DNA of 64,000 nucleotides, from IMG/VR virus record IMGVR_UViG_3300037882_003354, positions 1 to 64,000 of that record. One strand, 5' to 3'. Numbering within the stretch: position 1 is the stretch's first letter; every line of letters begins with the position of its first letter. Positions 10,507-46,094 of the stretch are shown in pieces. The position numbers and the translations under genes are program-made. The notes beneath the pieces are model-generated. The model searched no databases. It had not been told where the DNA came from and saw nothing but the letters and a program-made list of their open reading frames with translations.

Positions 10507-10514
10507 GGAAAACG

Positions 10515-11108
10515 ATGTATTCAAATCTTGTACCCATGGTGGTAGAGCAATCGGCTCGCGGTGAGCGCGCCTTCGACATCTTCTCACGTCTGTTGAGCGA
10601 ACGAATTGTGTTCCTCAACGGGCAGGTGGACGAACAGTCGGCCAATCTGGTGGTGGCACAGATCTTGCACTTGGAGAGTTCAGATTCCGAGAAGGACATA
10701 CATTTGTACATCAACTCACCAGGCGGGGTCATCACGGCTGGCATGGCCATCTATGACGTCATGCAGTTTGTCAAGCCCGATGTGTGCACTTATGTCATGG
10801 GTCAGGCTTGTTCCATGGGCTCGTTCCTGGCGCAGGCTGGCACTCCGGGCAAGCGTTTTGTACTACCCAACTCCAGAACCATGATTCATCAGCCGTCGGG
10901 TGGTGCTCGTGGCATGGCCAGTGATATTGAAATTTCCTACAACGAAATCATGTACTGGAAGAAACGGCTGACTGAACTGTATGTCAAGCACAATACCCAG
11001 GGCAAGACCTACGAAGAATTTGAACGTAACATGGATCGTGACACCTTCCTGAGTGCCCAAGAGGCCCTGGACTTTGGGTTGTGCGACAAAATCATTCAGC
11101 AACGGTGA
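10515..11108 (+). CDS. clpP: ATP-dependent Clp protease proteolytic subunit
   Basis: [22 protein letters not shown] (catalytic Ser), [12 protein letters not shown]. Confidence 0.97.
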
Positions 11109-11914: not shown

Positions 11915-11954
11915 TTTCATATAAATAAACATAGTTAGTAGCAAAGGACGAACT

Positions 11955-15239: not shown

Positions 15240-15422
15240 TTGAACTCAGTACAACAACGCATGGCAGAATTGATGGAGCCCATCAACCGTCAGATTATGA
15301 TGTGTGATTCCACACAAGAAATGCTCATGATTGCCAGTGCCATGATGGTCAGTGCCAAGGAAATTTTCGATAATCATATTGGTGTGCAGGGTCGTAAACA
15401 AATGTTCAAAGATCTGTCATGA
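15240..15422 (+). CDS. Hypothetical protein
   Basis: LNSVQQRMAELMEPI...; coupled to uvsE; start uncertain. Confidence 0.45.
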   Translation: MNSVQQRMAELMEPINRQIMMCDSTQEMLMIASAMMVSAKEIFDNHIGVQGRKQMFKDLS

Positions 15423-33414: not shown

Positions 33415-33419
33415 TTATA

Positions 33420-33722
33420 TCACTCCGGCACCACTTGAATGAGCAGGGGAAACTCGTGTGCTCGGGCCATTTGTGTGCCGTCCAGTGCCTTTTGTTCGGC
33501 AATCTCACAACTATAAACACCCACCACTGCATTACCCTGATTGTGAATTTGCAATGTTAATGCAACCGCGGCTTCCGCAGAGTGTTTGAACACCTGCACC
33601 AGCATGGCCACCACAAATTCCACAGTGGTAAAATCATCGTTGCACACAATGACCTTGTACTTAATGGGTTCTTTAACACGTGAGACTGTGTGTGATTTCT
33701 TTTCTATTACGATGTCTGTCAT
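33420..33722 (-). CDS. clpS: Clp protease N-degron adaptor
   Basis: YKVIVCNDDFTTVEFVV, IHNQG..VVGVY..EIAE, FPL. Confidence 0.93.
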   Translation of the reverse strand: MTDIVIEKKSHTVSRVKEPIKYKVIVCNDDFTTVEFVVAMLVQVFKHSAEAAVALTLQIHNQGNAVVGVYSCEIAEQKALDGTQMARAHEFPLLIQVVPE

Positions 33723-33756
33723 AATTTTATTTAAGTGTGTGTTTGACTCTTGGTTC

Positions 33757-33781
33757 AAAAAGGGAGCAGTCTCCTGCTCCC
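33757..33781 (-). terminator. Intrinsic terminator after hsp20
   Basis: GGGAGCAG/CTGCTCCC hairpin plus U-tract on the - strand. Confidence 0.75.
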
Positions 33782-33788
33782 TGGTTGC

Positions 33789-34223
33789 TTACTCCGATTT
33801 CAACTGGAGTTGTCGCGGCTTCAGAGACTCCGGAATCCTGCGATAGAGTGTGATGCTGAGCACGCCGTTCTTCACAGTGCCCTCACCCACCTCCATGTGC
33901 TCTGCCAGTGTCCAACTACGGGTAAAATCCCGTGTGGATAGTCCACGATGCAGATACTGGATGGACTCATCGTCAGGTTTGGTCCGTTGTCCTTTGACCA
34001 CCAATTGATTTTGATCAATCTCAACAGTGATCTCATCTGGCAAAAATCCCGTCACAGCGATTTCCAACTCGTAAGAATCTTCATCGTGTTTGAGAATGTT
34101 GTAGGGTGGATAACTGTTGTTGGCTTGAGTTGCGTGACGATTCTGAAAATCGTCAAACAAGGTGTCAAAACCCAGCAGGGCTCGGTTGAGCGAATTGGTG
34201 TCAAATCTAACTAATTGTGTCAT
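33789..34223 (-). CDS. Small heat shock protein (Hsp20/IbpA-like)
   Basis: YPPYNI, EIAVTGF, YLHRGLS.RDF, NGVLSI. Confidence 0.93.
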   Translation of the reverse strand: MTQLVRFDTNSLNRALLGFDTLFDDFQNRHATQANNSYPPYNILKHDEDSYELEIAVTGFLPDEITVEIDQNQLVVKGQRTKPDDESIQYLHRGLSTRDFTRSWTLAEHMEVGEGTVKNGVLSITLYRRIPESLKPRQLQLKSE

Positions 34224-34306
34224 GATATTTTTCCTTATTAAGTGTTATCATTGTTTTGGGCCCTATGCCCTATGCAGAAGCCATTAGGTCTTCCACACAT
34301 TTATTT

Positions 34307-34335
34307 ATTATAATTAACTACTAGGTATATGTCAA
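34307..34335 (-). promoter_or_regulatory. Consensus sigma70 promoter
   Basis: TTGACA-17-TATAAT upstream of hsp20. Confidence 0.8.
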
Positions 34336-34348
34336 ATGGTTTAAAATA

Positions 34349-34627
34349 TTAATCTTTTGTCACATGATCAGCAATGGGGGACAGTTTGTCCAGATATTCT
34401 TCACGGTAGACACGCTGACTCTCCACGGGATCATATGTGACTTTGTGCTGTTCCTTCATCACACCAAGGATATGATGCTTGAGTTTGTCCACAATACGCC
34501 TGCCCATGTCTTCCATGACCAAGTTTATATCCATGCCAGTGGCAACTTTTTTTAGTGCCACGCCGTATTCGTATATACGCACCCGGTGGGCCCAGGATTC
34601 AAAAGTTTCGTCAGGCAACCTCTTCAC
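34349..34627 (-). CDS. Hypothetical protein
   Basis: 92 aa, helical. Confidence 0.6.
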   Translation of the reverse strand: MKRLPDETFESWAHRVRIYEYGVALKKVATGMDINLVMEDMGRRIVDKLKHHILGVMKEQHKVTYDPVESQRVYREEYLDKLSPIADHVTKD

Positions 34628-34649
34628 TGTATGAACATCTCAATTGTGG

Positions 34650-35459
34650 TTAAATTTCAAACGTGCACCCTGAATTGAAGCCACTGGTATCTTCGTGACC
34701 CACATACCCGCGTGGGTTACTCAGCACCCTGGTGGTACCAATCATATAATCCACGGGATCATGCATGTGGCCGTGGATCCAGTTCTTGATGTTGCCATGA
34801 TCCAGGATCAGTTCACTCAGATCGCTGACATAACCACCGTTCATCAAATGATCGCCCTTGTACTTTTCATGGGTGCTCATGTGACTGGGCCCATGATGCG
34901 TGATGATGACAAACGGCTTGTCTGCATGTTCTTTGAGCATGAGCCGGAAATATTGCAGAGTCTTATAGTGAACACCAGCAGTATGCTCCGGAGTCAGTTT
35001 ATGATAGACGTCTTTACCCACATAGTGGTTTTGAATGACTTTGTAATCACTCATGCAACCCCTCAGATGGTATGCAGTCAAACTGTCATTCTTGTTCAAG
35101 TCAGTCCACAAGGTGCTGCCCATGAACATGACGCCCTGATACTCCACCACTTGATTTTCCAGTATGGTGACGTTCCGGGGCATGATGCTCTTGAGTTGAT
35201 CGTGGGTCTTGTCCAACCGACCGTGGTAATGTTCATGATTTCCTAAAACATAGAACACCTGGTCATACTTGGCACACTCCCACTCAAAAAAGTCCCAGCA
35301 GGATTTGCCTGGCACAGGAGGATAAGGTCGAGTGCTGTGGAATGCCTTGGTGATGCTGCGGGCTTCGGCGATATCGCCAGCCAGAATCAACACCTCTCCA
35401 CCAGGGAGTTCCTGGTATTGAAATTCCAGGTGGAGGTCTGAGCAAACTGAAACTTTCAT
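34650..35459 (-). CDS. Calcineurin-like metallophosphoesterase
   Basis: SDLHLE, LAGDI, GNHEHY, THH.PS, HGHMH. Confidence 0.9.
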   Translation of the reverse strand: MKVSVCSDLHLEFQYQELPGGEVLILAGDIAEARSITKAFHSTRPYPPVPGKSCWDFFEWECAKYDQVFYVLGNHEHYHGRLDKTHDQLKSIMPRNVTILENQVVEYQGVMFMGSTLWTDLNKNDSLTAYHLRGCMSDYKVIQNHYVGKDVYHKLTPEHTAGVHYKTLQYFRLMLKEHADKPFVIITHHGPSHMSTHEKYKGDHLMNGGYVSDLSELILDHGNIKNWIHGHMHDPVDYMIGTTRVLSNPRGYVGHEDTSGFNSGCTFEI

Positions 35460-35479
35460 GATAATCCTTTCTATACACT

Positions 35480-35508
35480 AGTATAGTTGATTTATCCCGA
35501 AATGTCAA
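35480..35508 (-). promoter_or_regulatory. Sigma70 promoter
   Basis: TTGACA-17-TATACT. Confidence 0.75.
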
Positions 35509-35517
35509 TCAGTGCGA

Positions 35518-36048
35518 TTATCTGGGTCGGATCTTGAGTTTGGCATAGATGTTCTGCACACCCACACTCTGACGGATGGCATCTTGTAGTGCATCATGCT
35601 TGCTGTTCTTGGGCATGTCAGGATCGTAACCCAGATCAAACAGCGTACGAGTGTCTCGCAATTGCCAGAAATTCCAGGGCAGGGGCTTGCCCAATTGACG
35701 GTAGATGTTTTCGATGATCACCAGGTCAAAAGTTGCACCGTGTGACCAGAAGGCATCGCAGCCCCAGGCAAATTTATGGAACCGATCCATGGCATCCACC
35801 AGACTGATGCGATCGTCAGGACTGAATGCTTCATCCTGAATGTCGGCAGCTTGCCGACCCCACCAATCCAGAGTGTCGGGATCCACCTCTCTGCCCAGCG
35901 CATCTTGATCGTCTATGCTGATACGGAAATAAATTTTATCACTGTATCCGTTGCCATAGGGGTTGAAATGTACTGCGCCTAAACTCAAGACCACAGCGTT
36001 GGGGGAAACTGCCAAGGTTTCCATATCTAGCATCAAATGTTTGGCCAT
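35518..36048 (-). CDS. DEDDh 3'-5' exonuclease (Rv2179c-like)
   Basis: MLDMETL, SLGAV, GATFD, RDTRT, HDALQD. Confidence 0.88.
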   Translation of the reverse strand: MAKHLMLDMETLAVSPNAVVLSLGAVHFNPYGNGYSDKIYFRISIDDQDALGREVDPDTLDWWGRQAADIQDEAFSPDDRISLVDAMDRFHKFAWGCDAFWSHGATFDLVIIENIYRQLGKPLPWNFWQLRDTRTLFDLGYDPDMPKNSKHDALQDAIRQSVGVQNIYAKLKIRPR

Positions 36049-36084
36049 GCTGGCTTTCTATTAAAAATATAGTCTAATTAACAA

Positions 36085-37047
36085 TTAGTCTGTTGTCGAC
36101 TGCTTCTTTTTCATTGCCATCTTATATCTACGTTGCGCTAGTGCTTCAGGAGACAATTTACTACCCAATTTTCGCTTGCTCATAGCTTGTTTCTCCTCAA
36201 CAGTCCACTTTTTTCCATAATTGGGATTTTTTTCGCCATCCATGTCAGTACGCCCTTTAAATCTCAAACCCACTAATTTTTTAAAATTTTCACCTTTGGG
36301 ACGTTGACCATTCTTTCTTGCTGTTTCAATCTGACGTTGTTTTCCTTCTGGCGTGTATTCTTTATTTTTGTTAGCCTCGTGCATTCTTTGAATTTGCTCG
36401 GGAGTATAGAGTTCTTCCCAAGTCTTTCCTCGTTTTTTAGCTGCACATTTTTCTATAATTGCTGGATCTCGTTTAATCCCACGCAGCGCATCAGATGCGG
36501 CTTTTCGTTTGACGATCACTTCAGGTCGTTGATTGGCGATTCTTCTATTTTCTAATGTTTTAGCTTTACGAACCGGGTCATTCCAGAGTTCATCAACACT
36601 TTTTTTCCGATTAAGTTTACCCTCTTCAGAAATATTTTGTTTCTTACCCCATGCTGGACTCAGTGGACCTTTTAGGGTTTGGAGATGCGCCACTCTTTCC
36701 AATCTTACTGATTCGAACAATCTACTGTTAAGTTTATATCCAGGTTTGTTGTATGAACCGTCCTTCATAATACACATAGCATTAAATGCATGCACCATTT
36801 TATTATGATAACCTATGCTCACATTCATTTTCCATAATATAGCATGTGCTACATAATGTTCTCTTGCAGTAAGACGAACGATATTATTTCTCGTATCTGC
36901 TCCTCCCCAACTTTTAGGTATTATATGATGCCCTTCTGTGTAAACATCTTTGGGTAACGTACGAGTCTGTGCTTTTTTGATAAGCGACTCATACCATCTA
37001 CTATGCTTGGTATCTCTCAATTTTACTTTAAGCGGCCAATTGATCAT
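36085..37047 (-). CDS. HNH homing endonuclease with a basic DNA-binding tail
   Basis: EGHHIIPKSWGG...NIVRLTAREHYVAH; GEKNPNYGKK; AT-rich. Confidence 0.88.
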   Translation of the reverse strand: MINWPLKVKLRDTKHSRWYESLIKKAQTRTLPKDVYTEGHHIIPKSWGGADTRNNIVRLTAREHYVAHAILWKMNVSIGYHNKMVHAFNAMCIMKDGSYNKPGYKLNSRLFESVRLERVAHLQTLKGPLSPAWGKKQNISEEGKLNRKKSVDELWNDPVRKAKTLENRRIANQRPEVIVKRKAASDALRGIKRDPAIIEKCAAKKRGKTWEELYTPEQIQRMHEANKNKEYTPEGKQRQIETARKNGQRPKGENFKKLVGLRFKGRTDMDGEKNPNYGKKWTVEEKQAMSKRKLGSKLSPEALAQRRYKMAMKKKQSTTD

Positions 37048-37095
37048 GATATTTTTAATAATTTAAGTCTTATTATAGCATCAATCTCCATCATG

Positions 37096-37332
37096 TCAAT
37101 ATAATTTTTTAGGCAGCTCTTGTTCCCGCAATTGTTTGAGCCAGCGGGCTCGGGCAGCACCCTTTTTACGTTTACGTTCAGTGGTGGGCTTCTCATAGAA
37201 CATGCCGGATCTGACCACCTCCAGGGTGCCGTTGTCTTCAATCAATTGCTTGAATTTACGCATGGCCACCGTGAGTGGTAGATCCCCCACCGTTATGCTT
37301 GATCCGCGTGTGTTGATTTTATTCCGCTTCAT
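37096..37332 (-). CDS. rpsU: Ribosomal protein bS21
   Basis: AMRKFK...[16 protein letters not shown]. Confidence 0.88.
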
Positions 37333-38548
37333 CGTCTGAATTTTCTTCGAATGTCATGGCAGCTGGCTGGCCAGTCACAGTGTCTTTGTTTACACAGATG
37401 CTTTTAAGACCCCGCTCCACTAGATTGACGGCATCAAATTGATAGGGCAACAGCGCACGCTCTATGATGTTCTTCAGGCCACGAGCATTGGTCTTCAATT
37501 CCTTGGCACGTTCTGCTATGTGAGTCAAGGCTGACTCTTCAAAAATTAGATCAATACCATCCAGCTCAAACATGTATTGATACTGGCGGATCAGACTGTT
37601 CTTGGGTTCTTTCAGCACGGTCACCAGATCGTCCACAGACAGTTCATCCACATTGGTTATCAGACCAAAACGTCCAACAAATTCTGGAATGAAACCAAAC
37701 TGTATGATGTCCTTGGTGGTCACCTGCTGATAAACTTTACTGTTGTTTTCCAAGTTGGCCACTGATGCATGAAAACCAATGCTGCGACTTTCCAGACGCT
37801 TGCTGATGATTTTGTCCAGGCCCACAAATGCACCACCACAGATGAACAGCATGTTGCGAGTGTCAATTTCTTGCATGTCACCACCGGGATGTTTGCGCTT
37901 GCCCGAATGCGGTACTCTGACAATGCCTCCCTCGATCATTTTAAGCAGGGCCTGCTGTACACCCTCTCCACTGACGTCGCGAGTGATGCTCATGTTTTCA
38001 CCCTTGCGAGCAATCTTGTCGATTTCGTCGATGTAAACAATGCCTCGGCTGGCCCTTTCAACGTCACCGTCGGCAGCGTTGATCAATCTGAGTATGATGC
38101 TTTCCACATCGTCGCCCACATAGCCGGCTTCTGTGATGCCAGTGGCGTCGCAGATGGCGAATGGTAGATCCAGGTAGTCGGCTATCTTTCTGGCCATGAG
38201 AGTTTTCCCGCAGCCAGTGGGCCCCAACAGCAACACGTTGGTTTTTTCCAACTCAATGTCCTTGCTGGGATTGTTGATGCGTTTGAAATGCTGGCTCACA
38301 GCCACACTGAGCACTGTCTTGGCATCTTCTTGGCCCACCACATAGTCGTCCAGGTAGTCCTTGATGGCAGTGGGATTCAGGGTCCGTTTCTCTGTGGGGT
38401 CGGCTTTACCTTTTTCATCATCCAGGATGCCCACACACAGACTGATACAATCGTTACAAATGGCGGCGTGCTCGCCCACGATTAGTTTTTCCACGTCTTC
38501 TTTGCTTTTTCCGCAAAAATCACACACATGATTAAGTTGTTTAGCCAC
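37319..38548 (-). CDS. clpX: Clp protease ATP-binding subunit
   Basis: CDFCGK zinc-binding domain; GPTGCGKT; IDEIDK; [12 protein letters not shown]; RKHP; IGF loop. Confidence 0.97.
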
Positions 38549-38930
38549 CTAGTACTGTCTCCAAAAAACCCTCGATACTGCTCACTCGATTTTGACTGAT
38601 GTGACTGTATATCTCAGCCACCTGATCATTCTCTGTGTGATAATAAAAATCCTGTCGGCCCAGCAGGTAACCACTCAAGGATTGTGTGATTAAATTCAAG
38701 CTGTCCAGGTTCAAGTACTTGTGTTCACAGCGAGCGGCTGCATACAAAAACCATGATATATTGTGTTCACCGTCATATACATAGATGTTTAAATCCTGGT
38801 CAAAATTGGATTTAGCCAACCATTGACTGGCTGCATCTTGTTCTTGATCGCTCAGATGAACCAGTAGTATGCTGAGATCCCCTGTCTCAAAAAAATCAGG
38901 AGGCGTGATTAGTTTTATTGTTCCCTGCAT
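38541..38930 (-). CDS. Hypothetical protein
   Basis: 129 aa; coupled. Confidence 0.7.
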   Translation of the reverse strand: MQGTIKLITPPDFFETGDLSILLVHLSDQEQDAASQWLAKSNFDQDLNIYVYDGEHNISWFLYAAARCEHKYLNLDSLNLITQSLSGYLLGRQDFYYHTENDQVAEIYSHISQNRVSSIEGFLETVLGG

Positions 38931-38931
38931 G

Positions 38932-40227
38932 TCATATCCTTGATTTCACGGACTGTTGCAGCGATCGCGGCACTTCGTCCAGTTCTAAATGTCCTGACTT
39001 TACAAGTTCCACGATTTCGTCAATGTAATCTTCCAGTTTGGAAAGACTGATGTCCTGATAATGTTCCCTGCTGATGGATTCCATGGTGTTGGTCCATTGG
39101 TTGCTTTGTTGTTGTTCTTCATTTTGTACATAATCGTGCGTCAAAGGTTCTGTGCCAGTGGATTCAGAAACCACATCTCCTGCCTGCTCAGGGCGGTCAT
39201 CTTCCCGAACTTCAGGTGGGCATACCTGTGGGCCGGCATGTACCCAACCAGCAGGCATCTTCCAAAAACTATCTCCTTGAAAAAGATAGGGATGACGCTC
39301 CACCAGGGTGAGTTCTGGTTCAACCACAGGTGTCGCCACCGGGCCAGCATCTGCCAGAGTGGCATCTGGTTCAACCTCTTGATCTGTGACAGTGAGCGGC
39401 TGTGGGTCTATGACTGCTTGGGTCTCTGCAGGGCTGTCACCCTCCTCAATTCTTTTCTTGAAGTTCTGAAAACTCACCTGGCTGGCCAACAGCAATATTA
39501 TAGCCAGTGGGTCAAATACCACAATCAGAGTGATGATGATCCAGGTCACTGACTTTTCCATGATGGCTGTATCAGTGGCACCATAAAAGAATGCCGCGAT
39601 GTAACGAATGGGCCCCACTTCTGCATCAACTGCACGTACTTCGGCGGCAATGGGTGCCCGTTGCTGATTCAGTTCCTGTATGATCTGTTGTGAGCTAGTG
39701 ATTTCGGACATCAGTCTGCTGCGTTCCTTGGACTGTGATTTTCTCACAACCACAGCACGATTGGCACCTGTTTCAGTAGTACTACGAGACATCACTTGGT
39801 CCACTGCTGTGTCCATTTGCTGGAGTGCTCGTCGATTGGCATCAATATTTTCTTTTTCAGTCTGGATCTTTTCATCGTAGATGGCAATCCTGGACATGAC
39901 ATCTCCTGACACCAGACTCTGATCACTGTGTGCCTTGCTCAGGAATCCAAAAATGCCCAGACTGGTGATCAGCATCAATACTATGATGGCAATGATCAGG
40001 TATGCCTTGATGGTGTAGTGCGTAATGGACCAGTTTTGCTTGAGCCAGACTGTGGCAATGAGTTTGCTGATCTCCAGGGTGACACCCATGATGATGATGG
40101 GTATCACGGCGGCAGAGAAGATGGCAGTGAGCCCAGACACTGAATAATAGACTGCCACTGCGGATATGGATAGCCCACTCAACAGGGCCAGGTATGCAAT
40201 CAGTCTTTCATTAAATGTTGGTTTCAT
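38932..40227 (-). CDS. Multi-TM coiled-coil membrane protein
   Basis: Several TM helices; GIFGFLSKAH, EVGPIRYIA, VFDPLA. Confidence 0.8.
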   Translation of the reverse strand: MKPTFNERLIAYLALLSGLSISAVAVYYSVSGLTAIFSAAVIPIIIMGVTLEISKLIATVWLKQNWSITHYTIKAYLIIAIIVLMLITSLGIFGFLSKAHSDQSLVSGDVMSRIAIYDEKIQTEKENIDANRRALQQMDTAVDQVMSRSTTETGANRAVVVRKSQSKERSRLMSEITSSQQIIQELNQQRAPIAAEVRAVDAEVGPIRYIAAFFYGATDTAIMEKSVTWIIITLIVVFDPLAIILLLASQVSFQNFKKRIEEGDSPAETQAVIDPQPLTVTDQEVEPDATLADAGPVATPVVEPELTLVERHPYLFQGDSFWKMPAGWVHAGPQVCPPEVREDDRPEQAGDVVSESTGTEPLTHDYVQNEEQQQSNQWTNTMESISREHYQDISLSKLEDYIDEIVELVKSGHLELDEVPRSLQQSVKSRI

Positions 40228-40248
40228 AGTGTATTTATTACAAGCAAT

Positions 40249-40626
40249 TTATCGACGCATTTTACTAATGTCGATGGCATCTTGACGGGAGAATACAGGT
40301 ACTGCATTACTTTTATGAAGTGTGGAAATGCCAATGATCTTGTCACCAGTGTACACAGGTGCGGCTTTCTTGGTACAAGGCACCCAACCAGTATTCAGGC
40401 TGGGGATCTTGGGTTCTGCCAGGCGGCGGTTGGGTTCAGTCACCCAGACTTCAGCAGACATGGCGCGGCGTCGCCGCTTGTCTTCAGCCTCCACACCCCA
40501 CTTCTTTTGCAGAGCTTGCCACTCTCGATCCAATTGTGCTGCTCGTTGTTTGTCTGCAGACGATGCAAACTTGTGTTTGCCCTTTTTTTTACCCGTGGTA
40601 TTCAATGCTGGATGTGCTAGGCTCAT
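40249..40626 (-). CDS. Basic phage hypothetical protein
   Basis: YTGDKIIGISTLHKSNAVPVF; sigma70 promoter at 40655-40683 (TTGACC-17-TATAAT). Confidence 0.7.
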   Translation of the reverse strand: MSLAHPALNTTGKKKGKHKFASSADKQRAAQLDREWQALQKKWGVEAEDKRRRRAMSAEVWVTEPNRRLAEPKIPSLNTGWVPCTKKAAPVYTGDKIIGISTLHKSNAVPVFSRQDAIDISKMRR

Positions 40627-40709
40627 GTGCGGTGTCTCGGTTGATTGTTGTACTATTATACTGGATACTGGACACTGGGTCAATGTGTCACCAGGCGTAG
40701 CTCACAGGT

Positions 40710-40737
40710 AAAAATAGGACCCGAAGGTCCTATTTTA
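40710..40737. terminator. Bidirectional intrinsic terminator
   Basis: AAAATAGGACC-CGAA-GGTCCTATTTT. Confidence 0.85.
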
Positions 40738-40756
40738 TTATTTCACCCGACTATTC

Positions 40757-41203
40757 TCAGAAAGAATATTTAAGACCAGCGGTGATTCGATTGCCGTTAA
40801 AATCACGCACTCGTGATTGGCCACGCTGATAGGAATAATCCAAAGTGGCTTTGACTTGGTCAAACACTGGAATTTCAGCACCAACACCCACCAGTGCAGC
40901 GCCACCATCAGACACGATGCCGTTTTCAAGATATGCAAAACCCGCCTTGACCGACAGTTCAACTGGTCCAACTTTTGTCACCTGGTAACTGCCCAGCAGG
41001 CTCCAGCGACTCTGATCATTGTCACCAGTGGTGCTACGATCAAAACCACCAGTTACGCCAAATGCACCGAACCGCTCACCCAGAGTGACACCGACGGAAT
41101 TGCGTTCACTACCAAAATCTCGAGCAGCAGTCACGCCCATTTCCAGTGCGCTGGCAGCAGTTGCCGACAGTGCGATTAACGATGCAATTACAATTTTCTT
41201 CAT
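40757..41203 (-). CDS. Outer-membrane beta-barrel protein (OmpA/Ail-like)
   Basis: Sec signal; alternating beta strands; C-terminal GLKYSF. Confidence 0.85.
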   Translation of the reverse strand: MKKIVIASLIALSATAASALEMGVTAARDFGSERNSVGVTLGERFGAFGVTGGFDRSTTGDNDQSRWSLLGSYQVTKVGPVELSVKAGFAYLENGIVSDGGAALVGVGAEIPVFDQVKATLDYSYQRGQSRVRDFNGNRITAGLKYSF

Positions 41204-41344
41204 GTTTAAGTTTCCTTTGAAATAATGATCTCAATGATCATTGTATATTATGTATCCTTTTGCTGACAATAGCAAGCGGAATCGGAAAAAACTGGTTACG
41301 GGTTCCAGCGCAGCCCAATTAGTTGCTGCCGATTTGACATGACT

Positions 41345-41378
41345 ATAATAACATGCAGTTGTTACACCATTGTTAAAC
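41345..41378 (-). promoter_or_regulatory. Pho-box-like promoter
   Basis: GTTTAAC-AATG-GTGTAAC-10 nt-TATTAT, matching PhoB promoter geometry. Confidence 0.5.
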
Positions 41379-42368
41379 GAGATTTTCCTTGAAGATGTTC
41401 CAGCAATGGTCCCAACTCCATTGCCGACTGTGCCGCTCCACCTGCTGTCTGTCCAGGGTCAGGCACTGATTGATGGCCCTGCGGAGATCCTGGTCTAGAC
41501 ATCCAGTGACACCTGACTCAATGATGTCCAGAGGGCCAGGCACAGGATATGCAGCCACCGGTGTACCCACTGCAAGTGCCTCGATGATCACCACCCCAAA
41601 CGTATCGTGGCGGCTGGTGAACACAAATACATCTGCCTGTGCGTAATACCGTGCCAGGCTGGTGCCTGTTTTTGCTCCGGTAAAAATAACATCGGGGTAA
41701 CGACTTTTCAGCTGGTTCAAGTATGGACCATCGCCCACCACTATCTTGGTGGCACCCGGATAGTACAGATTGCAGAAGTCATCCAGACCCTTCTCCTTGC
41801 TGATGCGGCCCACGCTGAGTAATATGGGACGGCCAGCCACTGTGGTGCCGCGCAGACTACTCTGAAATACATCACGATCCACACCCCGCGTCCAGGGAAT
41901 GATGTCACCGTCAAATCCGTGAGATCTGAGATCATTGACCATGGTCTGGGTGGTGGTCAGTACCCGTCCACTATGCTTGTGAAACCAGCGCACATACCAA
42001 TAGGTCATGAACATGGGAATGCCATAGATCTTTTTTAGGAATTCGGGAAATTTAGTATGATAGGAAGTGTTATAGCGCCGGCCACACAGATCCATCCAGC
42101 AACGTGCCGCCAGGCCAATAGGCCCCTCCGTAGCAATATGTATGTGATCAGCCCCCACCGCCGCAATCTTCTTGCCAATGCGCCAGGGCCAACTGAGTTT
42201 AACTTCAGGATAACCAGGGGTACTAATATGAGGGAACTGCCGGGGATCAAGATAAACAATATCGTACCCGTCATGACCTGCGCATATCTCAATGTTTTTG
42301 AACGTGGTGACAACGCCATTTAGTTGGTCAGGTAGATTGTCTGTTATTACTAGTATCTTTTTTCTCAT
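41373..42368 (-). CDS. GT4 glycosyltransferase, Agt-like diacylglycerol glycosyltransferase
   Basis: ITD...QLNGVVTT, YPEVKL, HIATEGPIG, YHTKFPE, RGVD, VGRISKEK, DTFGVVIIEALA. Confidence 0.85.
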   Translation of the reverse strand: MRKKILVITDNLPDQLNGVVTTFKNIEICAGHDGYDIVYLDPRQFPHISTPGYPEVKLSWPWRIGKKIAAVGADHIHIATEGPIGLAARCWMDLCGRRYNTSYHTKFPEFLKKIYGIPMFMTYWYVRWFHKHSGRVLTTTQTMVNDLRSHGFDGDIIPWTRGVDRDVFQSSLRGTTVAGRPILLSVGRISKEKGLDDFCNLYYPGATKIVVGDGPYLNQLKSRYPDVIFTGAKTGTSLARYYAQADVFVFTSRHDTFGVVIIEALAVGTPVAAYPVPGPLDIIESGVTGCLDQDLRRAINQCLTLDRQQVERHSRQWSWDHCWNIFKENLV

Positions 42369-43125
42369 CTTGTTCTGTTGTCCAAGTTATGATTTCCCAT
42401 GTGCCGTCATGATGTTCCACCAGGGCTGTGCATGATTCCACCCAGTCGCCATCATTCATGTAGGTGACGCCGTCTATTTCTTTTATTTCAGCATGGTGTA
42501 TGTGACCACAGATGACCCCATCATATCCACGCTTCTTGCAGTAGGCAGCCAGATTTTTTTCAAATCGGAATATGAAATCCACTGCCTTCTTCACACGTTG
42601 CTTGAGATACTGGCTCAGGCTCCAGTAACCAAATCCCAGGCGATGACGCAGCCAATTGAATTTGGTATTGAAACTCAGCATGAAATCGTAGGCTTTGTCG
42701 CCCAGGAACACCAGCCAGGGCGCCAGTCTGGTGATGCCATCAAATAAATCTCCGTGGGTCACCAGATAATGCTTGCCGTCCAGTCCAATATGCTCCACTT
42801 GGTTGGCTATTTCGATATTGCCAAATCCAATGTCATAGGGCATGAGCGGTCTTAAGAATTCATCGTGGTTACCGGCAATATAAATTACTCGGGTGCCGCG
42901 CTTGGAATGTCCAAGTATGCGTCGAACCACATTGGTGTGGCTTTGTTTCCATCGCCATTTGTTTTGTTGAATCTTCCAAATGTCCAGGATGTCGCCCACC
43001 AGATAAAGCGTTTCGCAGGTGTTGTGTTTGAGAAAGTTGTTGAGTTTGTCTGCTTGACAATCTCTTGTACCTAAGTGCACATCACTGATTGCTATTGTCC
43101 TATATTTTTTTTTATTTTTTGGCAT
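42328..43125 (-). CDS. LpxH-family metallophosphoesterase, PlcP-like phospholipase C
   Basis: ISDVHLG, LVGDILD.W, GNHDE, HGDLFD, CGHIH, NDGDWVESCTALVE. Confidence 0.85.
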   Translation of the reverse strand: MPKNKKKYRTIAISDVHLGTRDCQADKLNNFLKHNTCETLYLVGDILDIWKIQQNKWRWKQSHTNVVRRILGHSKRGTRVIYIAGNHDEFLRPLMPYDIGFGNIEIANQVEHIGLDGKHYLVTHGDLFDGITRLAPWLVFLGDKAYDFMLSFNTKFNWLRHRLGFGYWSLSQYLKQRVKKAVDFIFRFEKNLAAYCKKRGYDGVICGHIHHAEIKEIDGVTYMNDGDWVESCTALVEHHDGTWEIITWTTEQDEKKDTSNNRQST

Positions 43126-43192
43126 AAATAAAGTTGTAGTTCGCGATACTGGAAATATCCAACTACCCTAATGCTTGAAAGGAGCAGTCAGC

Positions 43193-43879
43193 ATGAGTAT
43201 TTATAAAGAAGTTCGTTACAGGAATATTACAACTAACGGACATTATATCTATGCCTATTTAAGAGAAGACGGCACACCTTATTATATAGGTAAAGGGCAA
43301 CGATATAGAGCCTGGATGAATCATCGAGTGAATAACAAGGGTGTTCATACACCCACCGATTTATTTCGTGTAGTTATTATGGAAGAAAATCTAACCGACC
43401 TTGGAGCATCTGCTTTAGAAAGATTTTACATAAGATGGTATGGTCGTAAAGATTTAGGAACAGGAACACTACACAATAGGACCGATGGTGGTGATGGCGG
43501 TAGCAATGACTCGGAGGAAACTCGTCGCAAAAAAGCAAGGCCAGGAAAACTAAACGGAATGTATGGTAAGAAGCGTCCGCCAGAACTCATTGCCAAATTA
43601 GTTGCTGCAAGTGTTGCTAATTCAAAAGGTAAAACTTACGAAGAAATATACGGAGAAGAGCGGGCGCAGGAAATAAAACAGGCTCGTTCAGTAGCACTAC
43701 AAAAACCTAAGTCTGATGCTCACAAAGAAAAGTGTAGAGAAAACGGTATGAAGGGTGCCTTAAAGATTGGCGCCACACGTAAAGGAAAAACGGCAGAAGA
43801 AATCTACGGCCCAGAAAAAGCACGTTCTATGGTTGAAAAAAGATTAGCAACATTAGCCAAGAAAAGTACTACTAAATGA
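43193..43879 (+). CDS. GIY-YIG-like homing endonuclease
   Basis: [30 protein letters not shown]; [10 protein letters not shown] x2. Confidence 0.85.
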
Positions 43880-44054
43880 ACCAGTTGCATGTCTTGAGTA
43901 TTTTGATGATCCTGTCTTCACTAGTGTGATGCATTCTGGCAGCCATGGTGATGAATTCAGCACCGCGCGACCTATACTCATCGTTACCCTGCTGCCAGCA
44001 TTGGTACATGTTTTTTAATTCATCCGCAGTCATGCTACAATGAGTTTTCTGCAT
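43872..44054 (-). CDS. Small hypothetical protein
   Basis: 60 aa; ATAAATA upstream. Confidence 0.5.
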
Positions 44055-44098
44055 AGCAGTATTTATCGCTCTAGAGTGTATGTAATGTTACAGTTGGG

Positions 44099-44734
44099 TT
44101 AAATCTGTGTCACAGTGATTACCGCACTAGGAATAGCAGGTCTCACATACGGTACAGTCTGTGCGGCGGTAAATTCAAGTTTTATGTCATCAACACGACT
44201 TAGAGCAAACTTCAGTTGAATATAGTCGTTGGCGTTGATGTTGTGAAGTAACCACGGTTTATTAAAAGTCTGATATACTGGATTAACCCCCTGTCTCAGC
44301 GAAATCTTTACAGCAGATTCTGCGATATCATTGCCATTCCTTGCCAACCAAAGAAACACATTTCTTTCAGCATTGCCGGTTATTTTTACTATCATTTCCA
44401 ACATAACCAAATAATCACCAGCAGTGTCAATGTTTAATCGAGTGGGTTGACCTGATATTACAGTGACGCCCGAATCCCCAACATGTTGCGTGACATCTGT
44501 AAACCAATCAAACTCATATATAGTATCAGCGGCCACAGCCGTGACATCTGCCATTTTGTGAAAACAACCGTGAACACCTTGAACATTGCTACCAATTGGT
44601 AGGCCGCCGGCAGTAGATCCATTAGAAATTCTTAAATTTGTTGCGGCCGGATCATAAAATATCTCGCCTGTTCGGCCCACATAAGCACCTGCGGTGCCCG
44701 ATACTGCTTTATTTACGAGTTTCCTTACAGTCAT
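44099..44734 (-). CDS. Fibre/C1q-like hypothetical protein
   Basis: GEIFYD...LRISNG.T.GG anchor-like motif; AGDY..., ANDYIQL, PSAVITV. Confidence 0.65.
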   Translation of the reverse strand: MTVRKLVNKAVSGTAGAYVGRTGEIFYDPAATNLRISNGSTAGGLPIGSNVQGVHGCFHKMADVTAVAADTIYEFDWFTDVTQHVGDSGVTVISGQPTRLNIDTAGDYLVMLEMIVKITGNAERNVFLWLARNGNDIAESAVKISLRQGVNPVYQTFNKPWLLHNINANDYIQLKFALSRVDDIKLEFTAAQTVPYVRPAIPSAVITVTQI

Positions 44735-44767
44735 ATACTATCCTTTTATTCTATAATATATTTAGTC

Positions 44768-44794
44768 AAAAGAAAGGGCTACCGAAGTAGCCCT
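44768..44794 (-). terminator. Intrinsic terminator
   Basis: AGGGCTAC-TTCG-GTAGCCCT followed by a U-rich tract. Confidence 0.8.
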
Positions 44795-44818
44795 ACTGTG
44801 TGTAATGTTACAGTTGCG

Positions 44819-44977
44819 TTAAATCTGTACCAAAGTCCAGTTGACTGTAAATGGCTTGCCCTTGGCTTTGCGTTTTAAGATTTTTTCAAACTCAAGTTTC
44901 TTGAGTTGAGCAATCCGGTCGGCATTGTGTTCGAGACAGGCTTGATACAGTTTTTTTATCAGTTTACGTTGTTTCAT
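44819..44977 (-). CDS. 52-aa basic protein (not in the ORF track)
   Basis: [14 protein letters not shown]...WTLVQI. Confidence 0.55.
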
Positions 44978-45032
44978 GATTTGCCCCTTCGCTATAGTAT
45001 AAACTATTTATATAGAAGGAGCAAATTATTCA

Positions 45033-45182
45033 TCAAACCTTGGCAGGTTCGCTGGCAACAGGTGCTGCAGGTACTGTAGGCACCTCAAAGGCTGGTGCAG
45101 GTGCGGCCTCAGGTGCCTTGCCACAAGCGACAAGAGCAGCAGCGGCGATCAGGGTGGCGATAGTAGTTACAATTGATTTCAT
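45033..45182 (-). CDS. Small lipoprotein
   Basis: MKSIV...ALVACGK lipobox; Ala/Pro-rich; GGAG RBS. Confidence 0.7.
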   Translation of the reverse strand: MKSIVTTIATLIAAAALVACGKAPEAAPAPAFEVPTVPAAPVASEPAKV

Positions 45183-45267
45183 GTTTTCTCCAGGGTTATG
45201 AAATGTCACATGTATAATGTAGCATGATGTCATGATTAATGCTAGTGTTTTTTAAAATATTTTCATC

Positions 45268-45580
45268 AAAAGAATGGGCCCCGAGGAACCCATTCACTAT
45301 TTCCTGTTTCTAGGGATAGTTCCCCAATGATGGTTTAAGCGGCCATCAAATATGCATCATCATTAGCTGCATTTAAAGGTTTTGCTTGATTGACAGTCAT
45401 CGCCTACTGTGTTGCCTGCTCCACTATCTCGCGCAATCGAAAACCTGGTCATCCCCATCAAAAGCACTCCCACGGTTTATCTGTCCGTTGCCAGCATACT
45501 ATGTACCTGGATGAAAATGCTTTTGGTGGAGATGGGCGGAATCGAACCGCCGTCTTGCCCGCCTTTGTTTTGCCGGAATT
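45268..45580 (-). ncRNA. ssrA: Circularly permuted (two-piece) tmRNA gene
   Basis: Acceptor piece GGCGGTTCGATTCCGCCCATCTCCACCA ends at 45524 and precedes the coding piece starting GGGGATG at 45456; G3-U70 pair; tag ORF 45370-45335 AANDDAYLMAA*; terminator 45268-45295. Confidence 0.92.
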
Positions 45581-45602
45581 ACAACAATTAAGAATATTTA
45601 GT

Positions 45603-46094
45603 CTACACTGGTTTGCCGTCTGCGTCAACTTCCACCCAGGTGTAATCTCCCAACCACATGACTCGGGCAATGTACTCATATTCGTCAGGAATGAACCAAT
45701 GGTCAGGATCAGTGATCACCAGCCGAGTAATGTTTTTCCTGGAATCAAAAACCAACCAGTAGGGTCGGCCGTGGCACACCTGAAACTGGTATTCAGCAGC
45801 ATGCACCTGATCTGTGATCATCAAGCGACGCTGAATGGCCTGCGCCTGTCGTTCCAGCACCCGTACCATGTCCATGATTCTGTCATACTCTTGCTGTGCG
45901 TACATCCTGGCCACATTGAGCATGACGTCCTTCTGCTGGGTCACTGGCACCAGATCAAACTTAGGACCACCTGCTTCAGTGGGGTAGGGACTCACATTCC
46001 TGTTGAAGAACGTCACCATGGCACCGTCGATTCGGGCGTCGTAACTGGTCCGGCCCTTGGCCAGATTGGATTTTTCTTCAGGATCAGGGTTCAT
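45603..46094 (-). CDS. DUF2452-like protein
   Basis: YPTEAGGPKF..VPV; QQEYDRI. Confidence 0.65.
   Translation of the reverse strand: MNPDPEEKSNLAKGRTSYDARIDGAMVTFFNRNVSPYPTEAGGPKFDLVPVTQQKDVMLNVARMYAQQEYDRIMDMVRVLERQAQAIQRRLMITDQVHAAEYQFQVCHGRPYWLVFDSRKNITRLVITDPDHWFIPDEYEYIARVMWLGDYTWVEVDADGKPV

What the first reader, a model, noticed from the sequence alone, without database searches (positions are those of the whole stretch)
33420..45580. Phage-encoded ribosome rescue and proteolysis toolkit
Seen in one window: tmRNA with a tag ending MAA, ClpX (intact RKH and IGF loops), ClpP (10515), ClpS, Hsp20, and bS21 overlapping clpX. Known: ClpXP degrades ssrA-tagged proteins through their C-terminal Ala-Ala. 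Inference: a near-autonomous trans-translation and degradation circuit that could counter mRNA/tRNA-cleaving defences or retarget host proteolysis. SmpB and ClpA are not in this window.
Basis: partly seen in the sequence, partly recalled or inferred. Interest (0 to 1): 0.7.

Follow-up and report, generated by a model that had tools for sequence, protein, structure and literature searches.

The report
Jumbo-phage tmRNA and Clp protease module
A 322-kb freshwater jumbo phage carries its own two-piece ribosome-rescue RNA (tmRNA), complete ClpXP and ClpAP/ClpS proteases, a small heat-shock protein and ribosomal protein bS21; relatives keep the cluster in the same gene order, but ribosome rescue must still use the host's SmpB.

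Summary
The window is the first 64 kb of a complete 322,512-bp phage genome. It holds a tmRNA (tag AANDDAYLMAA), ClpX, bS21 overlapping clpX, Hsp20, ClpS and ClpP, all with catalytic and loop motifs intact.

Corrections:
- The tmRNA is a circularly permuted (two-piece) gene of the betaproteobacterial type, with its own sigma-70-like promoter and terminator.
- ClpA and a DnaJ-domain protein lie at 278-282 kb of the same genome.
- SmpB, SspB, AlaRS, RF-1/ArfB-domain proteins and RtcB are absent.

The genes form a conserved block: tmRNA .. o144-o431-o129-ClpX-S21-exoribonuclease-(phosphoesterase-orf92-Hsp20-ClpS). At least 232 uncultivated viral contigs encode a related ClpX. Of the best 80 loci, 57 carry the tmRNA upstream and 75 have S21 beside clpX. 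The tmRNA stems covary, G3:U70 is kept in 27 of 27, and 51 of 53 readable tags end in [LMIV]AA. The phage ClpX sequences form one clade apart from bacterial ClpX.

"Near-autonomous" holds for degradation, not for rescue. A counter-defence role is untested. Phage tmRNAs, S21 and Clp sets are already reported in jumbo phages, so this is a new variant of a known kind.

The parts
45600..45628 (-). sigma-70-like promoter of the tmRNA gene (TTGACG-17 nt-TAGACT)
   Evidence: It lines up with the promoter-like 5' part of the Rfam beta_tmRNA consensus.
45524..45562 (-). tmRNA 3' tRNA-like domain (T arm and 3' acceptor strand, ending ACCA). It comes first in the gene, which shows the gene is permuted.
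   Evidence: ARAGORN verbose output reports 'Permuted', 3' tRNA domain at positions 55-93. The T stem is 5/5 paired.
45457..45523 (-). 67-nt intervening segment between the CCA end and the 5' acceptor strand, presumably removed during processing into two pieces
   Evidence: Its length ranges from 25 to 217 nt in relatives.
45429..45456 (-). tmRNA 5' tRNA-like domain (GGGGAUG...). It pairs 7/7 with the 3' strand and keeps the G3:U70 alanine identity pair.
45335..45370 (-). tag reading frame: GCA resume codon through TAA, encoding AANDDAYLMAA
45272..45295 (-). intrinsic terminator hairpin of the tmRNA gene (10-bp stem followed by a T run)
   Evidence: It matches the last helix of the RF01850 model.
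40249..40626 (-). o144, a basic protein of unknown function and first gene of the conserved o144-o431-o129-clpX-S21 operon. A promoter (TTGACC-17-TATAAT) lies at 40655-40683.
   Evidence: Found in 75/80 relatives. Start placed at M20 from alignment A2. Promoter. The structure model is poor, pTM 0.31.
38932..40227 (-). o431, a membrane / coiled-coil protein whose nearest Atlas clusters are almost all viral; function unknown
   Evidence: Found in 74/80 relatives. Only weak Pfam hits. Nearest Atlas clusters are virus clusters without a known function.
38541..38930 (-). o129, a small alpha/beta protein with a flavodoxin-like, nucleoside-deoxyribosyltransferase-like fold. Its 3' end overlaps the clpX start. 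It is not SmpB or SspB.
   Evidence: Found in 79/80 relatives. AF2 model pLDDT 91.8. Best Foldseek match 4mcj, TM 0.67. Atlas match to PF15891-like proteins, TM 0.73.
37319..38548 (-). ClpX AAA+ unfoldase with N-terminal C4 zinc finger, GYVG, RKH and IGF loops
37096..37332 (-). ribosomal protein bS21 with a short basic N-terminal extension. It overlaps the clpX stop by 14 nt.
   Evidence: S21 lies next to clpX in 75/80 relatives, and its ORF overlaps clpX in 74/75.
35518..36048 (-). 3'-5' exoribonuclease of the Rv2179c-like family, a conserved member of the block
   Evidence: PF16473, 120 bits. Found in 72/80 relatives.
34650..35459 (-). calcineurin-like metallophosphoesterase, a frequent member of the block
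   Evidence: PF00149, 32 bits. Found in 30/80 loci, many of which end before this gene.
34349..34627 (-). orf92, a small conserved protein of unknown function between the phosphoesterase and Hsp20
33789..34223 (-). small heat-shock protein (IbpA/IbpB-like alpha-crystallin domain). A perfect TTGACA-17-TATAAT promoter lies at 34307-34335.
   Evidence: Two lake metatranscriptomes hold contigs on it at about 98-99% identity.
33420..33758 (-). ClpS N-degron adaptor for ClpA. The pocket residues N-D-D, T and H are kept; E. coli M40 is V here.
10515..11108 (+). canonical ClpP peptidase (Ser-His-Asp triad). It is 27 kb from the block, among auxiliary genes rather than in a head-assembly module.

Best explanation
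This is a conserved auxiliary module of a widespread clade of freshwater jumbo phages. It is probably expressed early, and it props up translation and protein quality control in the infected cell.

Shown:
- The phage has a structurally intact two-piece tmRNA with its own promoter and terminator.
- It has intact ClpX, ClpP, ClpA, ClpS, a small heat-shock protein, a DnaJ-domain protein and bS21.
- The tmRNA, ClpX, bS21, an exoribonuclease, Hsp20 and ClpS keep one gene order in many relatives.

Inferred:
- Host RNA polymerase transcribes the module from sigma-70-type promoters.
- Host RNase P and 3' trimming enzymes cut the pre-tmRNA into an acceptor piece and a coding piece.
- Host AlaRS charges it through G3:U70, and host SmpB and EF-Tu deliver it to ribosomes stalled on broken mRNAs. 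Such mRNAs should be abundant if host mRNA decays during infection.
- The nascent chains receive a tag of the form ANDxx[YF]x[LM]AA (in this phage AANDDAYLMAA).
- Phage ClpXP, possibly mixing with host subunits, unfolds and degrades the tagged chains via the C-terminal Ala-Ala, which frees ribosomes and amino acids.
- ClpAP with ClpS, Hsp20 and DnaJ handle N-degron substrates and aggregates.
- bS21, probably translationally coupled to clpX, adjusts initiation on host ribosomes.
- The co-located RNase T-like exoribonuclease may trim the internal CCA end of the permuted tmRNA or degrade non-stop mRNA. This is speculative.
For: Integrity of the parts:
- tmRNA: RF01850 at 139.5 bits; permuted layout; G3:U70; encoded CCA; GCA resume codon; stop codon.
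- ClpX, ClpP, ClpA and ClpS motifs are intact against E. coli structures.

Selection on the tmRNA:
- In 27 of 27 parsed phage tmRNAs the acceptor stem is 7/7 paired, in 6 sequence variants.
- The T stem is 5/5 paired, in 7 variants, and G3:U70 is always kept.
- 53 of 56 tmRNAs have a readable tag: 42 end in LAA, 7 in MAA, 1 in VAA and 1 in IAA.

Linkage:
- 232 viral contigs encode a ClpX relative.
- In the best 80 loci, S21 follows clpX in 75, the exoribonuclease is present in 72 and o129 in 79. The tmRNA lies upstream on the same strand in 57.
- In six whole records: tmRNA 6/6, ClpP 5/6, ClpA 5/6, ClpS 5/6, DnaJ 5/6.

Origin:
- 65 phage ClpX sequences form one clade (support 100, stem length 0.94) apart from 80 bacterial ClpX of many phyla, which are at most 55% identical. 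This is an old phage gene, not host contamination.

Transcription signals and expression:
- Promoter-like sites number 39 against 23.4 +/- 4.9 in shuffles. They include 11-12 of 12 matches upstream of Hsp20, the o144 operon and the phosphoesterase gene. The tmRNA has its own promoter and terminator.
- Lake metatranscriptomes hold Hsp20 and ClpS contigs at 93-99% identity, and none for the neighbouring 4 kb.

Established knowledge: ClpX recognises the C-terminal Ala-Ala carboxylate of ssrA tags through its pore-1 and RKH loops (PMC7652416).
Against: - There is no SmpB in any of 6 records, two of them complete. tmRNA function therefore depends on compatibility with an unknown host's SmpB.
- The host is not identified. 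A search of 151 genomes of the class Gammaproteobacteria for the beta-type tmRNA found none.
- Evidence that the tmRNA is transcribed is thin. One 141-nt adapter-flanked fragment at 45484-45624 starts upstream of the predicted promoter and runs past the CCA end. It looks like read-through, precursor or DNA, and the runs were chosen because they hold tmRNA words.
- ClpP, ClpA and DnaJ are far from the block, so linkage is only partial.
- Gene order may reflect shared timing of expression rather than a shared pathway.
- Nothing shows that phage ClpX prefers the phage tag.
- Of the six whole records, the 39%-complete fragment lacks ClpP, ClpA and DnaJ, and the complete 354-kb relative lacks ClpS.
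Confidence: 0.6

Rival explanations
1. The genes act independently. The Clp machines, ClpS, Hsp20 and DnaJ serve phage-specific remodelling or targeted destruction of host or phage proteins, such as defence proteins, replication regulators or assembly chaperones. The tmRNA and bS21 serve translation. The shared gene order only reflects common early expression.
For: - ClpP, ClpA and DnaJ are encoded 27 kb and about 240 kb away from clpX.
- Published readings of Clp genes in Atu_ph07 and other jumbo phages propose replication control, assembly or host takeover (PMC6102473, PMC7824862).
- 23 of the 80 ClpX loci show no tmRNA within the sequence available.
- ClpX has many substrates that are not ssrA-tagged (established knowledge).
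Against: - The tmRNA sits upstream of the same operon, on the same strand, in 57/80 loci, and is present in 6/6 longer records.
- The tags keep the ClpX-type C-terminal degron in 51/53, which only matters if a ClpX-type or ClpA-type protease reads it.
Confidence: 0.28
2. One reading: the module exists mainly to survive host abortive-infection nucleases that cut mRNA or tRNA, by clearing the resulting stalled ribosomes.
For: It is conceptually compatible with a tmRNA, an exoribonuclease, two metallophosphoesterases and 11 phage tRNAs.
Against: - No RtcB in 6 records.
- No RF-1/ArfB-domain protein in 6 records.
- No defence or anti-defence signature was tested or seen here.
- Generalised mRNA decay during lytic infection explains the same genes without invoking a specific defence.
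Confidence: 0.1
3. The phage tmRNA is a decoy or inhibitor that blocks host trans-translation, as reported for the CDS-less tmRNA-like RNA of mycobacteriophage DS6A. Alternatively it is only a remnant of an integration site.
For: - No SmpB is encoded.
- A precedent of an inhibitory phage tmRNA form is cited in PMC11915505.
- tmRNA genes are common integration sites (same paper).
Against: - The gene is full length (model positions 1-331), with promoter, terminator, both tRNA-like halves and a tag frame.
- The tag frames are conserved with canonical degrons in 51/53 relatives.
- The stems covary.
- The genome has direct terminal repeats, and both flanks of the gene are phage genes in dozens of contigs.
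Confidence: 0.04

Closest known systems
Rak2-like / Atu_ph07-like jumbo phages (Agrobacterium phage Atu_ph07; Sinorhizobium phages AP-J-162 and Phosso)
   Same: These are jumbo phages that encode ClpX, ClpA, ClpP, ClpS, Hsp20, DnaJ and ribosomal protein S21. AP-J-162 also has a tmRNA (PMC6102473, PMC11242549). The ClpA and DnaJ genes lie close together here too. They give the best GenBank phage matches to this ClpX.
   Different: ClpX is only 50-53% identical. In those phages clpX lies next to topoisomerase genes, and in AP-J-162 also next to IF-3, not fused to S21, and no tmRNA-clpX-S21-exoribonuclease-Hsp20-ClpS block is described. Their hosts are soil Alphaproteobacteria. This clade is uncultivated, lives in fresh water, and carries a beta-type two-piece tmRNA.
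Bacterial trans-translation with ClpXP (E. coli ssrA/SmpB/SspB/ClpXP; the two-piece form of Caulobacter and some Betaproteobacteria)
   Same: tRNA-like domain with G3:U70, a tag frame starting with Ala and ending in Ala-Ala, and ClpX with RKH and pore-1 loops docking on ClpP through IGF loops (PMC7652416).
   Different: SmpB, SspB, AlaRS and RF-1/ArfB-domain proteins are not encoded. The intervening segment is longer than in the Rfam consensus (57 against 17 unaligned positions). The system sits in a virus.
Two-piece tmRNAs of aquatic phages (OM43 phage Melnitz, pelagimyophages)
   Same: Phage-encoded, circularly permuted tmRNA genes. A survey found 402 of 18,146 phage genomes with a tmRNA; 53 of the 133 unique tmRNA structures are two-piece, and 50 of those come from marine or aquatic phages (bioRxiv 10.1101/2021.08.24.457595).
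   Different: Those are alpha-type, some carry a glutamine riboswitch, and they are not linked to Clp genes. This one is beta-type (RF01850) and lies in a block with clpX.
Huge-phage translation gene sets (Al-Shayeb et al. 2020, PMC7162821)
   Same: tmRNAs, S21 with N-terminal extensions, and tRNAs in phages above 200 kb, interpreted as redirection of host translation.
   Different: That study reports SmpB alongside tmRNA in huge phages and does not mention Clp proteases in its main text. Here SmpB is consistently absent and full Clp machines are present.

Membership tests
tmRNA, permuted/two-piece, betaproteobacterial type (Rfam RF01850; RF04321) | Score at or above the curated gathering score over the full model | tested here: met
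   RF01850: 139.5 bits against 84, model positions 1-331. RF04321: 115.7 bits against 47.
tmRNA, permuted/two-piece, betaproteobacterial type (Rfam RF01850; RF04321) | Circular permutation: the 3' tRNA-like half, ending in CCA, lies upstream of the 5' acceptor strand and the tag frame | tested here: met
   ARAGORN reports 'Permuted': 3' domain at 55-93, 5' domain at 161-188, tag at 247-282.
tmRNA, permuted/two-piece, betaproteobacterial type (Rfam RF01850; RF04321) | Acceptor stem with the G3:U70 alanine identity pair, and a T arm supported by covariation | tested here: met
   Acceptor stem 7/7 paired and G3:U70 present in 27/27 phage homologues, with 6 acceptor variants and 7 T-stem variants.
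tmRNA, permuted/two-piece, betaproteobacterial type (Rfam RF01850; RF04321) | Tag reading frame with an Ala resume codon, a stop codon and a C-terminal hydrophobic-Ala-Ala degron | tested here: met
   GCA resume codon through TAA, AANDDAYLMAA. 51/53 readable relatives' tags end in [LMIV]AA.
tmRNA, permuted/two-piece, betaproteobacterial type (Rfam RF01850; RF04321) | Dedicated partner SmpB encoded with it | tested here: not met
   PF01668 is absent from G000 and 5 relatives. The RNA must rely on host SmpB. This bears on autonomy, not on the identity of the RNA.
tmRNA, permuted/two-piece, betaproteobacterial type (Rfam RF01850; RF04321) | Transcribed, cut into two base-paired pieces, and alanylated | tested here: inconclusive
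   Only one precursor-like 141-nt fragment was found in a lake metatranscriptome. Processing and charging cannot be tested with these tools.
ClpX | N-terminal C4 zinc finger, a single AAA+ module with Walker A/B, GYVG pore-1 loop, RKH loop, IGF loop and sensor-II arginine; equivalog score above the cut-off | tested here: met
   NF003745: 540.2 bits against 359. TIGR00382: 508.7 bits against 370.75. All motifs are seen in the alignment to 8e91_A.
ClpX | Forms a hexamer that docks on a ClpP tetradecamer | not testable with these tools
   Inferred from the intact IGF loop and the canonical ClpP. No assembly prediction was run.
ClpP (canonical ATP-dependent Clp peptidase, not a prohead protease) | Ser-His-Asp triad; a score above the canonical ClpP cut-off and below the cut-off for the ClpP-related head-maturation family; genomic context outside the head module | tested here: met
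   NF001368: 299.2 bits against 249. Clp_rel_HeadMat: 103.4 bits, below its cut-off of 120. TIGR00493: 281.2 bits, below 308.6. The triad is seen. Neighbouring genes are auxiliary enzymes.
ClpA | N-domain plus two AAA+ modules, no ClpB/ClpC middle domain, and a ClpP-docking tripeptide loop | tested here: met
   End-to-end alignment to E. coli ClpA (query 5-735 against 3-742) with both Walker A/B pairs and the KYR and GYVG pore loops. IGL is replaced by VGF.
ClpA | Equivalog score above the curated cut-off | tested here: not met
   TIGR02639: 868.7 bits against 993.15. It is the best-scoring family and the match is full length, so this is a divergent ClpA rather than another family.
ClpS | ClpS domain with the N-degron pocket residues | tested here: met
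   PF02617: 93.7 bits against 23. N-D-D, Thr and His are conserved against E. coli ClpS; M40 is V. The NCBIfam equivalog scores are below their cut-offs.
Small heat-shock protein (Hsp20 / IbpAB-like) | Alpha-crystallin domain | tested here: met
   PF00011: 60.4 bits against 20.8. IbpA/IbpB equivalogs score 109-112 bits, below their cut-offs of 207-212.
Ribosomal protein bS21 | S21 domain above the curated cut-offs | tested here: met
   PF01165: 41.8 bits against 27. TIGR00030: 40.2 bits against 28.95. Incorporation into ribosomes cannot be tested here.

The most novel reading that the evidence does not exclude
The block is one functional pathway that the phage runs largely by itself:
- a two-piece tmRNA whose internal CCA end is matured by the co-encoded RNase T-like exoribonuclease;
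- tags read preferentially by the phage's own ClpXP;
- ClpX and bS21 made in fixed ratio from overlapping genes, so that ribosome remodelling and ribosome rescue are coupled;
- the conserved unknown proteins o144, o431 and o129 in the same operon acting as new cofactors, for example an SmpB- or SspB-like helper of unrelated fold.
Probability: 0.2. Interest if true: 0.7.

Novelty: new variant of a known kind. Interest (0 to 1): 0.45.

Why it matters
If the tmRNA and the phage Clp machines work together, this would be the first case of a virus supplying both the tagging RNA and the protease that reads the tag. The clade occurs in lake and freshwater metagenomes from at least 11 studies. It would show that ribosome rescue and clearance of truncated proteins limit large lytic phages.

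The clade-wide absence of SmpB makes a clean prediction: the phage RNA must be compatible with host SmpB. That constrains host range and can be tested.

The tight clpX-S21 overlap and three conserved unknown genes in the same operon are concrete handles for finding new ClpX or ribosome cofactors.

Practically, ARAGORN called only 27 of the 57 tmRNA genes found with a clade-specific profile, so surveys may undercount phage tmRNAs.

Tried and rejected
- Megablast of the 13-kb region against GenBank phages gave no match. The clade has no close cultured representative in that collection. By tblastn the best ClpX match is 53% identical.
- Host inference failed.
  - RF01850 found no match at E <= 1e-10 in 151 genomes sampled from the class of an Acinetobacter handle.
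  - A first attempt with a locus as centre was a syntax error.
  - The Sharkady and Williams 2004 paper on beta-type two-piece tmRNA is not held.
- I tested whether a hidden SmpB or SspB sits among the conserved unknown genes.
  - o129 folds with high confidence into a flavodoxin-like, nucleoside-deoxyribosyltransferase-like domain, not an SmpB or SspB fold.
  - The o144 model is too poor to search (pTM 0.31).
  - The Atlas gave no informative relatives: virus clusters without a known function for o431 and nothing usable for o144.
- Complex prediction for ClpX with o129 returned 'no answer' (score 0.00). This counts neither for nor against binding.
- Host-DNA contamination or an att-site remnant is rejected, because the same layout with phage flanks recurs in dozens of contigs and the phage ClpX sequences form one clade.
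- ClpP as a prohead protease is rejected on family scores and neighbouring genes.
- tmRNA expression: the RNA-run hits are mostly short conserved T-arm pieces from other organisms. Only one near-identical fragment was found.

Full report
**What the window is.** The 64-kb window is the first fifth of G000, a virus record of 322,512 bp with direct terminal repeats, rated complete. Collagen-like tail-fibre genes and a ribonucleotide reductase confirm a phage context. Sampled words of the 37-46 kb stretch occur in lake and freshwater metagenomes of at least 11 studies. So this is an uncultivated freshwater jumbo phage.

| Element | Coordinates | Evidence |
|---|---|---|
| tmRNA | 45244-45616(-) by ARAGORN; 45271-45642(-) by Rfam | tag AANDDAYLMAA; RF01850 139.5 bits vs gathering 84 |
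| ClpS | 33420-33758(-) | PF02617 |
| Hsp20 | 33789-34223(-) | PF00011 |
| bS21 | 37096-37332(-) | PF01165 |
| ClpX | 37319-38548(-) | NF003745 |
| ClpP | 10515-11108(+) | PF00574 |

- bS21 starts 14 nt before the end of clpX.
- Alignment to E. coli ClpX (8e91) shows the C4 zinc finger, Walker A and B, GYVG, RKH, IGF and the sensor-II arginine.
- ClpP keeps Ser-His-Asp, and its N-terminus starts near the mature E. coli N-terminus.
- ClpS keeps the N-degron pocket residues, with Val in place of the E. coli gatekeeper Met40.

**Three corrections.**
1. The tmRNA is circularly permuted.
   - ARAGORN's verbose output and the Rfam alignment both put the T arm and the CCA-ending 3' acceptor strand (45562-45524) first.
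   - A 67-nt intervening segment follows, then the 5' acceptor strand GGGGAUG (from 45456), then the tag frame (45370-45335).
   - The best-fitting family is the betaproteobacterial two-piece type.
   - The gene has a sigma-70-like promoter (45628-45600) and a terminator hairpin (45295-45272).
2. The genome does encode ClpA.
   - It is a 755-aa protein at 278,426-280,693, aligned end to end with E. coli ClpA.
   - Both ATPase modules and both pore loops are intact, and VGF stands in place of the IGL docking loop.
   - A DnaJ-domain protein lies about 1.2 kb from it.
3. Several expected partners are absent.
   - SmpB is absent from the complete genome.
   - So are SspB, RF-1/ArfB-domain proteins, AlaRS and RtcB.
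   - Eleven tRNA genes are present.

**The genes are a conserved block, not a chance collection.**
- A scan of viral contigs with ClpX confirmed 232 relatives. The best 80 are 62-77% identical.
- Their order is [o298, o163] tmRNA .. o144-o431-o129-ClpX-S21-exoribonuclease, followed where the contig reaches that far by phosphoesterase-orf92-Hsp20-ClpS.
- Counts out of 80 loci: S21 in 75, the Rv2179c-like exoribonuclease in 72, o129 in 79, o431 in 74, o144 in 75.
- The S21 ORF overlaps the end of clpX in 74 of 75 loci.
- ARAGORN called a permuted tmRNA in 27 loci. An nhmmer profile built from those found one in 57 of 80, always upstream of clpX on the same strand.
- In this phage the block is interrupted. 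An HNH/NUMOD3 homing endonuclease lies between S21 and the exoribonuclease. A variable insert lies between the tmRNA and o144; it holds an outer-membrane-barrel protein, a glycosyltransferase, a second phosphoesterase and a GIY-YIG-like ORF.
- Across six longer records (this genome, a complete 354,680-bp relative and four fragments) the tallies are below.

| Gene | Records with it |
|---|---|
| tmRNA | 6/6 |
| ClpP | 5/6 |
| ClpA | 5/6 |
| ClpS | 5/6 |
| DnaJ | 5/6 |
| SmpB | 0/6 |

**Evidence of selection for function.**
- In the 27 tmRNAs whose tRNA-like halves could be parsed, the acceptor stem is fully paired in all, in six sequence variants.
- The T stem is fully paired in seven variants, and G3:U70 is invariant.
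- A tag frame could be read in 53 of 56 tmRNAs: 42 end in LAA, 7 in MAA (including this phage), and one each in VAA and IAA.
- A tree of 65 distinct phage ClpX and 80 bacterial ClpX puts all phage sequences on one side of a branch with support 100 and length 0.94.
- The nearest bacterial sequences are only 48-55% identical and come from many phyla. ClpX is therefore an old gene of this phage lineage.

**Expression.**
- Sigma-70-type promoter-like sites are enriched in 33-46.5 kb: 39 against 23.4 +/- 4.9 in shuffles.
- They include a perfect consensus upstream of Hsp20 and an 11-of-12 match upstream of the o144-clpX-S21 operon. This fits transcription by host polymerase.
- Two lake metatranscriptomes hold contigs on Hsp20 (about 98-99% identical, assembler depth up to 57) and on ClpS (93-97%). 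They hold none on the roughly 4 kb from the phosphoesterase gene to clpX.
- For the tmRNA itself I found only one adapter-flanked 141-nt fragment (45484-45624, one mismatch). It begins upstream of the predicted promoter and runs 40 nt past the CCA end.
- A second contig covers the o163/tmRNA junction.
- Those runs were chosen for holding tmRNA words, so this is weak evidence. It looks like precursor or read-through rather than mature RNA.

**Mechanism.**
- The degradation side is self-sufficient on paper: ClpXP, and ClpAP with ClpS, plus Hsp20 and DnaJ.
- The rescue side is not. The RNA needs host SmpB, AlaRS, EF-Tu (not searched for here) and processing enzymes.
- The most economical reading has two parts. 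The phage tops up tmRNA and the proteases that clear tagged fragments, at a time when mRNA is being destroyed and host gene expression fails. bS21 biases initiation.
- That ClpX reads the C-terminal Ala-Ala of ssrA tags through its pore-1 and RKH loops is established (PMC7652416). That the phage enzyme does so with the phage tag is inference.
- The conserved 3'-5' exoribonuclease could trim the internal CCA end that a permuted gene creates, or degrade non-stop mRNA. This is speculation.
- The counter-defence idea is neither supported nor excluded.

**The conserved unknown genes.**
- o129 is coupled to the clpX start. It folds confidently (pLDDT 91.8) into a flavodoxin-like domain nearest to putative nucleoside deoxyribosyltransferases (TM 0.67-0.73), with weaker likeness to receiver domains.
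- It is not SmpB or SspB.
- A complex prediction of o129 with ClpX gave no answer.
- o144 and o431 remain unexplained.

**Comparison with what is known.**
- Huge phages with tmRNA, SmpB and S21 are described (PMC7162821).
- Two-piece tmRNAs are known in aquatic phages (bioRxiv 10.1101/2021.08.24.457595).
- Atu_ph07 encodes ClpX, ClpA, ClpB, ClpP, ClpS, Hsp20, DnaJ and S21 (PMC6102473). Its relative AP-J-162 adds a tmRNA (PMC11242549).
- A comparative review lists ClpP, ClpS, ClpA, ClpX and Hsp20 in jumbo phages (PMC7824862). The ingredients are therefore not new.
- What I did not find described is the following combination: a beta-type two-piece tmRNA in a fixed syntenic block with clpX, an overlapping S21 gene, an exoribonuclease, Hsp20 and ClpS, across a large freshwater clade that consistently lacks SmpB.
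- My literature searches were limited to the held library.

**Verdict.** This is a new variant of a known kind, of moderate interest.

Noticed in passing
window 36085-37047 (-), promoter 37072-37099: An HNH/NUMOD3 homing-endonuclease-like ORF is inserted between S21 and the exoribonuclease. It has its own perfect TTGACA-16-TATAAT promoter. tblastn found it in none of the 80 relatives, and blastp against their ORFs found one hit (L075), at a different position. It is probably a recent mobile insertion that splits the conserved block.
   Followed up: partly
window 43175-43879 (+) and 11955-12815 (+): Two GIY-YIG-type endonuclease candidates. The first shows a YIY..YIGKG motif and NUMOD3-like repeats by eye but has no Pfam hit; it lies on the opposite strand and occurs in only 4/80 relatives. 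The second has a weak SegE_GIY-YIG hit next to ClpP.
   Followed up: no
G000 278426-282035 (outside the window): ClpA and a 289-aa DnaJ-domain protein lie about 1.2 kb apart. The pair is present in five of the six records searched, including this genome. Atu_ph07 carries ClpA and DnaJ as consecutive genes (gp292/gp293), which hints at shared ancestry with Rak2-like jumbo phages.
   Followed up: partly
L064:4240-4444, L014:5640-5761, L061:3648-3754, L036:4956-5194, L044:5083-5141, L054:3050-3105: Several related phages carry a second, partial tmRNA-like segment near the full gene, either a coding-piece or an acceptor-piece fragment. These could be duplications or decay products.
   Followed up: no
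L006-L085 (80 related loci): ARAGORN called only 27 of the 57 tmRNA genes that a clade-specific nhmmer profile found. In four of the five longer relatives the gene scores below the RF01850 gathering score (35-61 bits). Standard surveys may undercount divergent phage tmRNAs.
   Followed up: yes
window 40757-41203 (-) and 45033-45233 (-): The phage encodes an outer-membrane beta-barrel protein (YfaZ/OMP_b-brl-like, with a signal peptide). A 66-aa ORF with a lipoprotein-like signal ending in a cysteine lies just downstream of the tmRNA.
   Followed up: no
window 38541-38930 (-): o129, translationally coupled to clpX and present in 79/80 relatives, has a confident nucleoside-2-deoxyribosyltransferase-like / flavodoxin-like fold. 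Its invariant residues (L7, P11, D12, Q31, N48, Y50, W60) do not match receiver-domain catalytic residues. Its function is unknown.
   Followed up: partly
window 33400-34211: Hsp20 and ClpS of this phage or close relatives appear as contigs in two lake metatranscriptomes, while the adjacent 4 kb does not. This fits the perfect sigma-70 promoter upstream of Hsp20.
   Followed up: partly
G000 302276-307321 and 119146-119229: A cluster of ten tRNA genes (Asn, Ala, two Ser, Lys, two Leu, Cys, Thr, Gly) plus a separate tRNA-Leu. A phage tRNA-Ala is present, but no AlaRS.
   Followed up: no
window 8603-16453 (+): The neighbours of ClpP are auxiliary enzymes: a BTLCP-type cysteine peptidase (C93), a PTPS/QueD-like enzyme, an FAD-dependent oxidoreductase, a WYL_2-domain protein and a UvdE UV endonuclease.
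   Followed up: no
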